Positions 16,516 through 60,808 of a stretch of DNA of 64,000 bases are shown in pieces. A model generated the notes under the pieces. The model did not search any database and was not told where the DNA came from. It saw only the letters and a program-made list of their open reading frames with translations. This stretch comes from Zygnema circumcarinatum SAG 698-1b. Its lineage: Eukaryota > Plantae > Zygnematophyceae. The stretch spans positions 2,718,689-2,782,688 of the forward strand of contig CM074809.1 in assembly GCA_037447605.1 (NCBI GenBank), written 5' to 3'. The translations under genes were made by a program, and so were the position numbers. Positions within the stretch are counted from its first letter, which is position 1; each line of letters begins with the position of its first letter.

Positions 16516-16543
16516 TGATGGCCTCGCCATCGCGAGTTCAATG
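16516..16543 (+). repeat. Dispersed 28-bp hairpin motif, copy 1 (TGATGGCCTCGCCATCGCGAGTTCAATG)
   Basis: Matches copies at 26950-26977 (-), 50978-51005 (+) and 60778-60808 (-). Confidence 0.7.
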
Positions 16544-17431
16544 AAAGTTTTTCACCCTTTTCCCCCTTTGGACCGTGGTGGCTCGTTCCTTCAAAAATTG
16601 TCGTTCCCTTTCCTTGGCCGCAAAGCCCACCCGTCGTTCAACTCACGTGAAGTCACGTCACATAACGTCACGTCTTTGTGCAACACTGAAAAACCAGACC
16701 ACGCGCGACGCGCTGCTACAGGATTGGTGGAACGCCAGATTCGGCAAATCTGTATCAGCCAATCAGAGCCGCCGTCGGCCAGCCTCTTTCGGACTTTCCC
16801 ATCAACGAAATGATGCCATGTGGCATTCATATTTCCTCGTGGCACTGGGACACGTACGGCAGGTCCAGCGTGGCAGCTCCGATCTTGCGGGGCTCCCGTG
16901 AATCCGTGGCCGCTCACGTGCCGTACGGTACGGCTTGGTCCTACATTGGTACGGTACGGCGCCACTCTATACCGTACGGGTCACCGTCATTCCCTTGCCA
17001 TTTCCCGAAGACGACAACCGTCAAGTCGAGTTTGAGTTTGGTCGTCCAATCACGACTTGCCATGGTGGCGTTGTCATTTCGTGGCGGGCGCTGGTTGGCT
17101 GTAGCCCATTCGTACGGTCCTTTACGGCATTTGTCCACACATACGGACGGCGCCTTTCCCTATCGCGGCTCGCCCTGCGACGGAAGGAAGGCTGCCAGTG
17201 AGGGAGTGGCCTTCTGTACGGCAGCAAACACTTCTCGCGCAACGTGGACCGTTGGATCGGAGATCGGACGGAGGAGGGGGGAGGGGAGGGGAGGGGAGGG
17301 GAGGGGAGGGGAGGGAGCAAAGGCGCCGAGAGTTTGGCAGGGGGAGTCTGCTGGTCTGCCTGCCTTCCTGCCTGCGCCGCAGCGGAGAGCTTGGGCTGCC
17401 GCAGAGGGAGGGAGGAGTGAGGAGGGCGACC

Positions 17432-20400
17432 ATGGGGGAGGCAGTGGGCTCTGCGGCGAGTGCGGCGCGGCAAATGCAGCCTGCCATGGCGACCGCCAGA
17501 CGTCTCTGGTTTGAGGAGGAGATTGAGGAGGATTTGCGCTGGGTCTTTGGAGTCAAGAGGTAACAAAGGAGAGAGTGGCTGAAGAATAAGAGGAAGAAGC
17601 GGAGCAGGAAGCTGAGGCATGGCTTCAGAATCTCGCATGTTGGAAGGAGAATCTAATTTGTTGTTTGGAAGGCGGGTCGCAGCATAATTCACACGGGTGT
17701 GAGCAAGTTTCAGGATGTTGAACTCGTCGAGAGCGGTCCGTTTGGCAAGGTCAGTGACGACTCGTGTTGCTGCTTCATCTCTACCTCGAACAGCAGAGAC
17801 TCGTTTATGCTGCAGGACCTGGCGGTACCACTACGGTGTTATGGTCGAGGTCTTGGAACAGGGTCATCTAAGCGTAGGAGGATGTTTGAGCAAAGAAATT
17901 GCTCGATACCTTTTTCCTGTTTTGAGCTCTACAGGGAATTGCAAGAGCCGGTACTTTCGTCAGAGTCGCCTTCAGCGCCATTGCAATTTTGCTCCAAACT
18001 TTGTATTCAATACGAATTTGTTGAAAACTTACAGGCTTTAAAGCGCTGGTGCTTGTAATCAGCGTTTTCATCCTTGCGGAATTCGCGGAATCTAGGATAA
18101 TTCCACAAAAGTATTGACTTTGTGAGAGATGTGGGCGAGCGGTAGAGGTGGTGCTAGAAGGAAAGCAAGCCTTGACAACATGGACAGTGCAGACTTGCCT
18201 AGTCCGTACAATCCAGAAACCATTAAATGCTTCGTTAACACCACAGCTGCATTGGATTTATAATTCGGGCTTCTGTTGTGGTGGCGTATAAGGAGAGAGT
18301 AAATCAGTTTTGTTATTCCCAGCACTTTCCGACACCCCAATCTAGTTGCCTTTCACGAGTCAGAGTGCAATTAAGAGCAGAATCGAAGAGCTGACAATGA
18401 TTAAATTACGTCAGGTGGGGAAATTAGGAAGATTGTTGTGAATTATGGATGAATTGCGGAGGGCGAGCCGTAATTCACACTGTATGATAATTCTCCTCCT
18501 GAAAAGCTAATGAATGTTGCCAGGACTTAAAAATTACAGATGAAAGGTGAATTTACCCAATTTAAAGCTGGATATACTTGTCCCATAAATATAATCACAT
18601 GGGACCTCGAAGGTTATTGGTTTCTGGCTTGAGATCTATTAATAGCAATTGAGTAAGTTGTCTTCATTTACCCAATTGCGTCAGAGCACTTGTGGAGGGT
18701 GGTGGAGGGGGGTTCAAATCGTGGCGCATGCAGATTTTCCAATGTAAGCTTATTTCATCTGTGGCCGTAGTGCAGGTGCTCATTCTAGACGGCAAATTGC
18801 AGAGTGCGGAGATGGACGAATTCGTCTACCATGAATGTTTAATCCATCCTTCCCTACTCGTTCATCCCAAGTGAGTCTTTGATTCTGCCAGATATGATCT
18901 CTCGCTGTATTTAAGCTAACTAAAGGGGAGTGAAAGGCCATATCCTTAGAGAAGACGCGAACTTTGGAGAAGCATAGGTTTGCGGGACAGGAATTGGGCT
19001 TTCTGAGGACAATGTGGTCCTTCGTTATCTTTGCTAACGGCAAGTTGTCAACCACCTGCATCCAAAGGAAATCTTGATGGATCAGGTTCACATTTTCATT
19101 CGTGTAGACTGCAACGATTGTGATGTTTCTCTGATGTGAGCAGTCCTCAGCGCGTGTTCATCATGGGCGGAGGAGAAGGCGCGACGGCTCGTGAAATTCT
19201 AAGGCATCGAAGTGTGGAGGAGGTTGTGATGTGTGACATAGATCAGGTGTGTTTGGCAGCAGCTACTGTGTATGCCTGAGAACCAGGTCCTGCAACTAAC
19301 TGTGGGTATTTTGCGGATGGTTCAGTGCTTGAGATTGATCCCTGCGCATTTGAAAATTCTTGTCTTTCGCTTAATCAAGAAACATATGTTTTTTAGAAAT
19401 GTTTTCGTCCAGTGACACTTATGTATCCCGGTTGGAGATTGGGCTGCGGTATTACTCCTGCAGGTTGTGGTGGACTTCTGCCGCCAGCATTTATCTGCCA
19501 ATAAAGCAGCATTCAAGAGTGATCGTCTTCAGCTCATCATCAACGATGCTAGGTGAGAGGTCTTTGGATGAGAAGATAGCGATTCAGTTAGTGGATGTAA
19601 TTCTTTCTTGGAAGCATGTGGATCCATATCATGATCATCTTAGACTAAGGCAGTCATCCAGGTTGAAGTGATGGTATCAAGTTAATTTCACAAGCTCAAG
19701 TCATGCTGTCGTGCAGAGCAGAGCTGCAGAAGGAGCAAGAGCCTTATGACATTATTGTGGGAGACCTCGCGGATCCCGTGGATGGGGGCCCTTGTTATTT
19801 GTTGTACACGGAGTCGTTCTATGAAACAATCTTGAAGCCAAGACTGAAGCCGGGGGGAATTTTTGTCACTCAGGTGTGTAGGAGCATCTAAACTCGGCAG
19901 CTGATGGAATTTTGCAGCACAGGACTTGGGAACTTGTCTTGAGTTGCCCGCTAATAGGAATAGGGGACTGAATGGAGGGGAAACACAGGCAGGGCCTGCG
20001 GGCATATTGACAGCAACGGATGTCTATACGCCCATATACAATACGCTCAAGCAAGTCTTCAAATGTACGCTGTATGACCTGATGTCTCCCTAAGCCTGCA
20101 GAAGGGAAGCAAAAGCTTTCGCTTGTTTGACTGTGCGTTGGTCTATCTTGCGGTTGAATTTCTATCTAAGGTTTACCACTAAGGTCACAGAAGCTGCTTC
20201 GGTCCGGTGCTGAAACGTAATTTTTGTGAGTATAATTAAGTTTTTTAATTTAAGTTAAAAAGGTTAAGTTTTTAAGTTTAAGGCTTTGTTATGGAATGCT
20301 GTGGACATTTGCAGTCATATAAGGGTGTAAGGCCTAAGTCGAAAGTGAGATTGACCTTTTTTTGGGATGGAGCTGTCGGCAGATGTTACTCCATATGCTG

Positions 20401-21267
20401 CGCATGTTCCCTCGTATGCTGACACGTGGGGCTTTGTAATGGTGAGATCTGCTCCCACGCAAGCCACTTCTTCACCCTGAATGCCTTTGATGGTGCTGGC
20501 TGAGATCGTCAATTGCAGAGGATATACGATTTGAACTTACAGCTTCTTGGATGAGGCCACCGAGTGCTGTTGCCCATCTGCAGTCTGGACAGTGTGGTGT
20601 CGTTTGGACAGAGAGCGGACTGCCTTTTCTCGTCTGGGGGGTGTCTAAGGCAGCGAGTGGTTCACTAGTACGAGGAATGGCTGTGGTTAACAGCTTCTGC
20701 TAGTGCGTTTTTCCTGTCGTGGAGAGGGTGGGAAAAAAAAAGCTGTGCAGTCTAAGAATGCTCACTCCACGCGCACATTCGTTGCAGGCGTCTGATGAGC
20801 CTCTGCCCAAGTTGCGTGGAGAAGAAGCCGATGTCCGAATTGAAGAGCGTGTGACAGGAGAACTGCGCTTTTTGGATGGCGATACGTTGATTTCTGTCTT
20901 TTCGTTAAACAAGTACACAAGGCGATTGTAAGGATGCAGTACCACATGATTACTTCTTTTGTCTAACAGGACAGGGTAGCGGAGAGGCTGTTCTGTTAGA
21001 TGCTCAGGATCTCAAACTCAGAGCTGGAAAAGTGCATTGCAAACGTAGTTTCATCGTTCGTTGGTTCTTAGGCCATGGCATGATGCGTGGGAAGGATGGA
21101 AAGCATGGCTCATTATAAAGTGAGAGGAGAAGCAGTGGACTAATAGTGCTGCTTTTCCTCTGCGCAGGCTGGCGGAGGAGACGACCGTCTATACTGAGGA
21201 CACCCCCATGTTTGTGCATGGCCATGGAATGCAAGCTCTCCATCATACAGACAAGGCCCTCAGCTGA
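17432..21267 (+). CDS. ACL5: Thermospermine synthase (ACAULIS5-like)
   Basis: Ten in-frame exons (17432-17559, 17683-17749, 18776-18870, 19144-19246, 19464-19552, 19717-19873, 19989-20064, 20383-20441, 20788-20927, 21168-21267). Motifs [56 protein letters not shown] and C-terminal HGHG fit ACL5 rather than spermidine synthase. Confidence 0.93.
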
Positions 21268-60000: not shown

Positions 60001-60074
60001 CGTCCGCGGAGGGTTCGAACCCCCGACCTTCCGGCGTCTATCGCCTCTTGGGCCGGTCGACTCTTCAACGGACC
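60001..60074 (-). pseudogene. tRNA-derived element (tRNA pseudogene or SINE head) lacking a D-arm
   Basis: Minus strand GGTCCGT...GCGGACG acceptor-like stem (6/7 pairs), CCGGC/GCCGG anticodon-like stem around a 16-nt loop, and a canonical T-arm GGGGG-TTCGAAC-CCTCC (B-box). No proper D-arm or A-box. Confidence 0.5.
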
Positions 60075-60777
60075 TCGGATCCTTCGTCGTCGCCGCAGGA
60101 AATTTCACATACCGAAAACGCAGTCCAGGAACCCAGATAACGCGACGCGCTGCGTAGGACAGATGTATTTCAAGCGAGATCTGTGCTGGGCAGGAATAGT
60201 GCATAGATTACTGTGATATAAGGTCTTGGGAAGCTGAGAGGATATGCTTGCAGTCTTGTAAGACTTGGCGCCGCCGTACAAAGAGGAGGACGTCGTGCTC
60301 TGTATAGGTCCTCGCATGTGATCATTCTGCAGCGATGTGCCCATACGCAGGCTAAGGAATCAATATTTCCATTCCACTGCATCAGTGCATATCTTCATTA
60401 TTTTTTCCATTGGTGTTGTTGATCCGTGGAGCATATTTTCAGGTGGCCGTCCCTCTTTCGCTGCGCCCGGCCCTCGTTCGCTGCGCCCGTCCAACTCTTA
60501 GTTCGATCCATGCTTTGTACCACGTCGACGGACAACTGCTTACCCCTTACCATCATATTGTTTAGCGTATCGCAATTCTGTGAGATGGTTTGTTGATGTG
60601 ATGTTGATCCTGATCTCCTACCATTCACCATCAGCCGAAAACTTAAATAGTAATGACTTACGAGCGTTTGAAACAAAACAAACGAGGAAGCCGCTGTGTT
60701 TTTGCACGAATCATGCTTTAAAAAAGTCGTTGCATTCGGGCATACATGACAACAGGATACAAGCAGGGAGGATGTGG

Positions 60778-60808
60778 CGTTGACCTCACGATGGCGATGA
60801 TGCCATCA
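60778..60808 (-). repeat. Dispersed hairpin motif, copy 4 (3-nt loop duplication)
   Basis: Minus strand reads TGATGGCATCATCGCCATCGTGAGGTCAACG, followed by CCACATCC as in copy 3. Confidence 0.72.

What the first reader, a model, noticed from the sequence alone, without database searches (positions are those of the whole stretch)
16516..60808. Conserved 28-bp hairpin motif at four head-to-tail gene junctions, at near-fixed distance and orientation after the stop codon
Seen: copies at 16516-16543, 26950-26977, 50978-51005 and 60778-60808, consensus TGATGGC(A/C)TCGCCATC(G)(T/C)GAG(A/G/T)TCAA(T)G with an internal inverted repeat GATGGC-N3-GCCATC; three copies share ~60 bp. Each lies 648, 709, 618 or 722 bp downstream of the stop of SET, CUL1, LEA and VHL respectively, reads in the same direction relative to that upstream gene (two on +, two on -), and separates it from a tandem downstream gene. 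I found no copy by eye in the convergent junctions, nor in the two TE-disrupted tandem junctions. Inference: a lineage-specific transcription terminator, insulator or boundary protecting downstream promoters in a compact genome, or alternatively a decayed short TE with strong positional bias.
Basis: partly seen in the sequence, partly recalled or inferred. Interest (0 to 1): 0.75.

Follow-up and report, generated by a model that had tools for sequence, protein, structure and literature searches.

The report
Short retroposon tails between genes
The four hairpin motifs are real, but they are most likely leftover tail ends of a common jumping gene (a LINE-type retroposon) of this alga, not a purpose-built stop signal; their tidy placement after genes is still unexplained.

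Summary
Four copies of a 45-69-bp block lie at the stated coordinates, and a profile search finds no fifth copy in the window. Chance expectation is zero. All four sit in tandem gene junctions, 618-722 bp after the upstream stop, in the sense of both neighbours.

The terminator/insulator reading is not supported. The stem shows no compensatory change and the fold is not unusually stable. Conservation is about as good outside the hairpin as inside it.

Two copies are flanked by long direct repeats of the kind made by target-primed reverse transcription: 14 bp at c1 and 21 bp at c2 (p about 0.01-0.02 each). The 5' extents differ between copies while the 3' ends roughly coincide. There are no terminal inverted repeats or LTR ends.

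The scan found this hairpin before. Five first-reader notes, not followed up, on other DNA of the same genome describe GATGGC-N3-GCCATC as the 3' tail of LINE/retroelement copies and as a high-copy dispersed element of about 95 bp.

Best reading: 5'-truncated or SINE-like copies of a LINE whose 3' stem-loop is its reverse-transcriptase recognition signal. The narrow distance range and uniform orientation remain unexplained. They could reflect target preference, retention or exaptation.

The parts
16518..16563 (+). Copy c1: shortest relic (about 46 bp). It begins inside the hairpin core (core 16516-16543) and ends in a 9-nt unit repeated 2.3 times (TTTTCACCC, 16549-16569).
16504..16517 (+). c1 upstream direct-repeat arm (CCCTTTGGACCCTG), read as a target-site duplication.
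   Evidence: p = 0.017 against random positions
16564..16577 (+). c1 downstream direct-repeat arm (CCCTTTGGACCGTG). The next bases (GTGGCTCG) resemble the motif start, as in a microhomology-mediated 5' junction.
26943..27006 (-). Copy c2: 64-bp relic (hairpin core 26950-26977) lying exactly between the two arms of a 21-bp direct repeat.
27007..27027 (-). c2 upstream direct-repeat arm (TCTCCTTTATTGAAAGGAGGT).
   Evidence: p = 0.012
26922..26942 (-). c2 downstream direct-repeat arm (TCTCCCTTTATTGAAGGGGGT).
50947..51035 (+). Copy c3: conserved block (hairpin core 50978-51005; the 3' stem arm reads GCCATT). There is only a weak flanking repeat, TGGTGCA(C)ATTC at 50874-50885 and 51020-51030 (p = 0.17).
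60750..60840 (-). Copy c4: conserved block (hairpin core 60778-60808, loop lengthened by 3 nt). No flanking repeat was detected.
36960..36969 (.). Assembly gap inside a poly-G run. It is not part of the feature and is listed because the scan's program flagged it.

Best explanation
The four motifs are dead, very short copies of a non-LTR retroposon family of this streptophyte alga. They are either extreme 5'-truncations of a LINE or copies of a short SINE-like partner of about 95 bp that shares the LINE's 3' tail.

The GATGGC-N3-GCCATC stem-loop lies about 20-30 nt before the element's 3' end. It is inferred to be the RNA signal that the LINE's own ORF2 protein binds to start target-primed reverse transcription, as in 'stringent-type' LINEs. 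The hairpin is conserved because every copy descends from RNA that needed it to be copied, not because it acts at the place where it landed.

Shown here: the copies, their extents, the flanking duplications of two copies, the absence of TIR or LTR ends, and the absence of covariation. Inferred: the link to an autonomous LINE (from unchecked notes on other windows) and the RT-recognition role (by analogy with other LINEs).
For: (1) Flanking direct repeats abut the conserved block: 14 bp with 1 mismatch at c1 and 21 bp at c2. Each has p = 0.012-0.017 against 3000 random window positions with the same geometry. My own Fisher combination of the four p values gives about 0.007. Long TSDs of variable length are the mark of target-primed reverse transcription.

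(2) The 5' limits differ (c1 at 0, c2 at -33, c3 at -31 or further). The 3' limits roughly agree, at +34 to +47. This is the 5'-truncation pattern.

(3) Both TSDs begin with CCCTTT or CTCCTTT, like the element's own 3' end (YCCCTTT). The c1 5' junction shows about 10 nt of microhomology to the motif. Both fit annealing-guided priming and end-joining.

(4) No terminal inverted repeats and no credible TG..CA ends with a TSD were found. No coding remnant lies upstream.

(5) Identity inside the c2-c3 block is about the same in the flank as in the hairpin core, by my count from the alignment (about 77% against about 86%). That looks like decaying copies, not a selected core.

(6) Five first-reader notes on other windows of this genome describe the same stem-loop at the 3' end of LINE/retroelement copies and as a high-copy dispersed intergenic element of about 95-100 bp. 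These are leads, not checked by me.

(7) 3' stem-loops recognised by the cognate ORF2 protein, and shared with partner SINEs, are established for stringent-type LINEs (PMC4176376, PMC1636434).

(8) The 21-base pattern has no match in the prokaryote, viral or JGI metagenome collections. This fits a lineage-specific repeat.
Against: No autonomous LINE carrying this tail is in the window, so the key link rests on notes I could not check. Copies c3 and c4 have no significant TSD. There is no poly(A) or clear simple-repeat tail, apart from a 9-nt unit repeated 2.3 times at c1.

A neutral TE model does not predict what is seen. All four copies lie in tandem junctions, none in an intron, a convergent spacer or a divergent spacer. 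All are in gene sense (1/8 by chance). All fall within a 104-nt range of distance from the upstream stop (P = 0.0008-0.007, post hoc).
Confidence: 0.65

Rival explanations
1. A retroposon tail with a real positional logic. Either the family integrates preferentially just beyond gene 3' ends in gene sense, by annealing of its YCCCTTT end to pyrimidine-rich gene-sense 3' flanks or by access to open or R-loop DNA at termination zones. Or copies landing there are retained or exapted as terminator or boundary elements.
For: The distance range of 618-722 nt has P = 0.0008-0.007 under uniform placement. Orientation is 4 of 4. All copies lie in tandem junctions and none in introns. The copies sit where the T-A skew of the gene-sense strand switches from positive to negative. 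The TSDs start with the element's own terminal bases. CCYTT words cluster on the sense strand around c1 and c2.
Against: There are only four copies and the pattern was defined after seeing them. J4 has 1.9 kb between the copy and the next ATG. CCYTT clustering is absent at J3 and J4. There are no transcript ends to anchor the claim.
Confidence: 0.17
2. A dedicated host cis-element, unrelated to any mobile element, that ends upstream transcription or insulates the downstream promoter. It would act either as an RNA hairpin or as a site for a roadblock-type DNA-binding protein.
For: Position, orientation and junction type are as above. The one stem change (c3, GCCATT) would still pair as G-U in sense RNA. 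The 3-nt loop insertion in c4 keeps the stem.
Against: There are no compensatory changes. Fold z-scores on the sense strand run from -2.3 to +1.0, and the hairpin is not even in the MFE of c3. Conservation extends about 30 nt either side of the hairpin at similar identity. Long TSD-like flanks occur at two copies. The same hairpin is reported at LINE 3' ends elsewhere in the genome. The changed loop length argues against a fixed-spacing dimeric protein site.
Confidence: 0.08
3. A distal promoter element or general-regulatory-factor site of the downstream gene.
For: ACGT-core clusters, a (TA)n tract and a GA tract start 60-300 bp downstream of c1, c2 and c3. So three copies lie at the upstream edge of a probable promoter.
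Against: At c4 the ACGT-rich promoter of the next gene lies about 1.6 kb further on. The distance to the downstream ATG ranges from about 565 to 1935 bp, much wider than the distance to the upstream stop. The TSD and LINE-tail evidence applies as above.
Confidence: 0.05
4. A tiny ORF (sense ATG GCC TCG CCA TCG TGA, reading MASPS-stop) or a small structured RNA gene.
For: The mini-ORF is open in all four copies, and the c4 insertion is in frame.
Against: The palindrome contains ATGGC on both strands by construction. The stop is lost in c1. The start context is poor. Rfam finds nothing at gathering score, and only chance-level hits at E <= 1. There is no C/D, H/ACA or tRNA-like architecture.
Confidence: 0.03

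Closest known systems
3' tail stem-loops of stringent-type LINEs and their partner SINEs (eel UnaL2/UnaSINE1, zebrafish ZfL2-1 and ZfL2-2; PMC1636434, PMC4176376)
   Same: A short conserved hairpin lies a few tens of nt before the element's 3' end. It is kept across diverged subfamilies and shared by short non-autonomous copies. Copies are 5'-truncated and flanked by variable TSDs.
   Different: The stem here is a plain 6-7-bp helix with a 3-nt loop, without a bulge or internal loop. No clear terminal microsatellite is seen. The autonomous partner was not seen by me. The host is a streptophyte alga, and my paper searches turned up no description of such tails there.
5'-truncated L1 insertions with microhomology at the 5' junction (established knowledge of L1 TPRT; see also PMC10830416)
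   Same: Variable-length TSDs of 14-21 bp. The start of the TSD resembles the element's 3' end. There is microhomology at the truncated 5' junction (c1).
   Different: There is no poly(A) tail. A specific 3' hairpin implies stringent rather than relaxed template choice.
Roadblock terminators or insulators of compact genomes (yeast Reb1-type sites; plant BORDER-dependent 3' pausing). From my own knowledge, not tested.
   Same: They lie between closely spaced tandem genes, downstream of the upstream gene's 3' end and upstream of the next promoter, with an orientation relative to transcription.
   Different: Those are short protein-binding sites or have no DNA motif at all, and they are not flanked by TSDs or derived from a retroposon tail. 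Nothing here shows binding or termination.
MITEs and other short DNA-transposon relics enriched near genes
   Same: Short, high-copy and gene-proximal.
   Different: MITEs have terminal inverted repeats and short TSDs of fixed length. Here there are no TIRs, and the TSD-like repeats are 14 and 21 bp.

Membership tests
Non-LTR retroposon relic (5'-truncated LINE tail or LINE-dependent SINE-like element) | Flanking target-site duplications of variable length (about 7-20 bp) | tested here: met
   c1 has 14 bp with 1 mismatch (p = 0.017). c2 has 21 bp (p = 0.012). c3 is weak (p = 0.17) and c4 has none. The feature is met for two of four copies.
Non-LTR retroposon relic (5'-truncated LINE tail or LINE-dependent SINE-like element) | Common 3' end with variable 5' ends | tested here: met
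   The 5' limits are 0, -33 and -31 or further. The 3' limits are +34 to +47, judged from the TSDs and from the pairwise extents.
Non-LTR retroposon relic (5'-truncated LINE tail or LINE-dependent SINE-like element) | 3' tail identical to that of an autonomous element encoding RT and endonuclease | not testable with these tools
   There is no LINE ORF in the window. Only unchecked first-reader notes from other windows state this.
Non-LTR retroposon relic (5'-truncated LINE tail or LINE-dependent SINE-like element) | A-rich or simple-repeat 3' terminus | tested here: inconclusive
   There is no poly(A). c1 ends in a 9-nt unit repeated 2.3 times. The others end in a pyrimidine-rich YCCCTT stretch.
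Non-LTR retroposon relic (5'-truncated LINE tail or LINE-dependent SINE-like element) | No terminal inverted repeats and no LTR-type ends | tested here: met
   The repeat scan and the TG..CA plus TSD scan gave only chance-level candidates.
Stringent-type LINE 3' recognition hairpin | Hairpin bound by the cognate ORF2 protein and required for retrotransposition | not testable with these tools
   This needs a retrotransposition or binding assay. It is inferred by analogy with PMC4176376 and PMC1636434.
Dedicated transcription terminator or insulator element | Structure under selection (compensatory changes in the stem, unusual stability) | tested here: not met
   0 of 7 pairs show a change on both sides. 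Sense-strand z-scores are -2.3, -0.4, +1.0 and -1.5.
Dedicated transcription terminator or insulator element | Coincides with transcript 3' ends or blocks read-through | not testable with these tools
One protein search meant to reach transcripts found nothing.
Dedicated transcription terminator or insulator element | Present at tandem junctions as a rule, absent elsewhere | tested here: inconclusive
   It is present at four of about six tandem junctions and absent from the convergent and divergent spacers and from introns. The sample is too small.
MITE / DNA transposon relic | Terminal inverted repeats and a short TSD of fixed length | tested here: not met

The most novel reading that the evidence does not exclude
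A LINE-tail retroposon family of a streptophyte alga homes to, or is selectively kept in, the narrow gap just beyond a gene's 3' end. It does so in gene sense, guided by annealing of its pyrimidine-rich 3' terminus. Some copies now serve as terminator or boundary elements between tandem genes.
Probability: 0.15. Interest if true: 0.65.

Novelty: new member of a known kind. Interest (0 to 1): 0.3.

Why it matters
As it stands, this is mostly a correction. What looked like a lineage-specific terminator is most likely the conserved 3' recognition hairpin of a high-copy LINE/SINE family, a well-known kind of element. It matters for annotating this genome: the family should be masked before hunting for motifs, and the hairpin makes a handy tag for it.

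It also documents a stringent-type LINE tail in a close algal relative of land plants. If the sense-oriented, fixed-distance placement after genes holds genome-wide, it would be an example of safe-haven targeting or exaptation of a retroposon at gene boundaries.

Tried and rejected
Known RNA families: none at gathering score over the whole window. Around c2 and c3 there were only chance-level hits at E <= 1. ARAGORN found no tRNA.

snoRNA, SECIS, plant snRNA USE, Pol III A/B boxes and a Helitron 3' end were considered by eye. All were rejected because the required boxes are absent or not shared by all copies.

Solo LTR: no credible TG..CA ends with a TSD and no LTR pairs in the window.

Tandem array: TRF found no array at any locus, apart from a 9-nt unit repeated 2.3 times at c1.

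Longer element: no similarity beyond the block within +/-2 kb.

LINE coding remnants upstream of the copies: none in Pfam.

So the UTR ends are unknown.

Copies elsewhere: the 21-base pattern has no match in metagenome, viral or prokaryotic genome collections.

Target-word test: CCYTT clusters on the sense strand at J1 and J2 but not at J3 or J4. This is not decisive.
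Full report
OBSERVATION

The degenerate 26-mer TGATGGCNTCGCCATYRYGAGNTCAA matches three of them without mismatch, against zero matches in 100 shuffles. The fourth copy, 60778-60808 on the minus strand, differs by a 3-nt duplication in the loop.

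A profile HMM built from the four copies recovers only these four in the 64-kb window (E 1e-15 to 3e-19). The next hit is at E = 0.64, so no weaker copy hides in the convergent, divergent or other tandem spacers, or in introns.

Pairwise BLAST of +/-2 kb shows that the shared block is short: 28-45 bp for c1 and 53-69 bp among c2, c3 and c4, at 75-89% identity. Nothing else is shared.

The distances to the upstream stops are correct. The flanking gene identities were checked with Pfam: Rubis-subs-bind, Cullin and Cullin_Nedd8, SMP, Peptidase_C1 and Inhibitor_I29, UCH, Mito_carr and GDT1.

The flagged assembly gap, 36960-36969, lies in a poly-G run in the divergent spacer between the cullin and a mitochondrial-carrier gene. 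It is more than 10 kb from any copy and has no bearing on the copies or on any reading frame used here.

IS IT A STRUCTURED OR FUNCTIONAL HAIRPIN?

RNAalifold returns only the 7-bp stem and finds no pair with changes on both sides. Single-sequence folds are not unusually stable: the sense-strand z-scores are -2.3, -0.4, +1.0 and -1.5. In c3 the hairpin is not part of the MFE at all.

Rfam finds nothing at gathering score. Around c2 and c3 it finds only chance-level hits at E <= 1. ARAGORN finds no tRNA.

The small ORF on the sense strand (MASPS-stop) and the ATG on the antisense strand both follow from the palindrome containing ATGGC. The stop is lost in c1.

In the c2-c3 block the flank is about 77% identical and the core about 86%, by my count from the alignment. 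The block therefore behaves like a decaying repeat unit, not like a selected core in free-drifting DNA.

ANATOMY POINTS TO RETROPOSITION

Two copies are bracketed by long direct repeats that abut the conserved block.
- At c1, CCCTTTGGACC[C/G]TG lies at 16504-16517 and again at 16564-16577.
- At c2, a 21-bp repeat lies at 27007-27027 and 26922-26942 (TCTCCTTTATTGAAAGGAGGT against TCTCCCTTTATTGAAGGGGGT). It encloses exactly 64 bp.

Against 3000 random positions of the window scored with the same geometry, these have p = 0.017 and p = 0.012. c3 has a weak candidate (p = 0.17) and c4 has none. My own Fisher combination of the four p values gives about 0.007.

The 5' limits differ: c1 starts inside the motif, c2 at -33, and c3 at -31 or further. 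The 3' limits fall at +34 to +47.

Both duplications begin with CCCTTT or CTCCTTT, the same bases as the element's own 3' end. After the second arm at c1, the sequence (GTGGCTCG) resembles the motif start, as in microhomology-mediated joining of a truncated 5' end.

There are no terminal inverted repeats and no credible LTR ends. There is no tandem array. No coding remnant lies upstream.

Long TSDs of variable length, variable 5' ends and a common 3' end are the signature of target-primed reverse transcription, that is, of LINE or LINE-dependent copies.

WHAT THE SCAN NOTED BEFORE

A word look-up for the two half-sites returned five first-reader notes from other pieces or places of this same genome.
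- Three describe a conserved GATGGC-N3-GCCATC stem-loop at the 3' end or tail of LINE/retroelement copies from diverged subfamilies (s1-390407, s1-372356, s1-341373).
- Two describe a high-copy dispersed intergenic element of about 95-100 bp with the same hairpin (s1-344022, s1-332443).

None of the five shows a follow-up, and I could not read those windows, so they are leads only. They match the anatomy found independently here, and they changed my reading from 'promoter or UTR element' to 'retroposon tail'.

Another note calls the genome Closterium-like (s1-378350). A paper on the Closterium peracerosum-strigosum-littorale complex reports 47-64% repeated elements (PMC10407611). I did not verify the species.

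MECHANISM

In stringent-type LINEs the ORF2 protein binds a stem-loop in the 3' tail of its own RNA, and partner SINEs share this tail (PMC4176376, PMC1636434).

By analogy, the hairpin here is the template-recognition signal of the source element. It is conserved among subfamilies because every copy derives from RNA that needed it. The copies in this window are dead relics of 46 to about 90 bp.

This step is inferred. It needs the autonomous element and an assay.

WHAT REMAINS ODD

All four copies lie in tandem junctions and in the sense of both neighbours.

The four distances from the upstream stop span only 104 nt. Under uniform placement within the four stop-to-ATG intervals, the probability is 0.0008. 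With 300-450-nt exclusion margins it is 0.0025-0.007. This is a post hoc test.

The copies sit where the T-A skew of the gene-sense strand flips from positive (3'-UTR-like) to negative.

ACGT-core clusters, a (TA)n tract or a GA tract follow within 60-300 bp at c1, c2 and c3. At c4 the next gene's ACGT-rich promoter is about 1.6 kb further on, beyond a GC-rich stretch with a B-box-like word.

This could mean target preference. Possible causes are annealing of the YCCCTTT end to pyrimidine-rich gene-sense flanks, or access to open DNA at termination zones. It could also mean survival only in the narrow neutral gap between a poly(A) site and the next promoter, or exaptation.

The CCYTT word count supports sense-strand clustering at J1 and J2 only. 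With four copies and no transcript ends, I cannot choose between these.

LIMITS

- One protein search aimed at transcripts found nothing.
- The pattern is absent from the metagenome, viral and prokaryotic collections. No tool reaches the rest of this eukaryotic genome.

VERDICT

I estimate 0.65 for a plain retroposon tail, 0.17 for a tail with real targeting or exaptation, and the rest for host-element readings.

Noticed in passing
window 9064-10137: A (GA)n microsatellite of about 1.1 kb, preceded by GA-rich degenerate repeats (8336-9115), fills much of the GDT1-to-SET tandem spacer. This is one of the tandem junctions without the motif.
   Followed up: no
window 3289-3798: A 21-nt tandem repeat. 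The repeat finder lists 16 overlapping copies of a 177-nt reference, spaced 21 nt apart. It reads as a VVSHCGR heptad repeat in one frame, with no Pfam match.
   Followed up: no
window 36940-36977: A poly-G run of at least 30 nt is interrupted by the 10-N assembly gap, in a very GC-rich spacer between the cullin gene and a mitochondrial-carrier gene.
   Followed up: yes
window 59050-59200 and 16643-16674: Dense clusters of ACGT-core (G-box/ABRE-like) words lie upstream of the alpha/beta-hydrolase-like gene (ATG 58843, minus strand) and of the spermine/thermospermine-synthase-like gene (ATG about 17429, plus strand). Both gene names are by eye only; Pfam gave no hit on the single exons tried.
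   Followed up: no
window 59900-60100 (minus strand): A GC-rich stretch holds a tRNA B-box-like word (GGTTCGAACCC) next to a poly-C/G run, between copy c4 and the next promoter. ARAGORN and Rfam find no tRNA here. It may be a relic of the tRNA-box-bearing LTR elements noted elsewhere in this genome (s1-360955).
   Followed up: partly
window 26922-26942 and 27007-27027: The c2 target site is itself a near-perfect hairpin (CTCCTTT-ATTG-AAAGGAG) about 650 bp after the cullin stop. The insertion split and duplicated it.
   Followed up: no
window 26690-26790: A (TA)n tract of about 100 bp lies in the probable promoter of the papain-type protease gene, about 160 bp downstream of copy c2.
   Followed up: no
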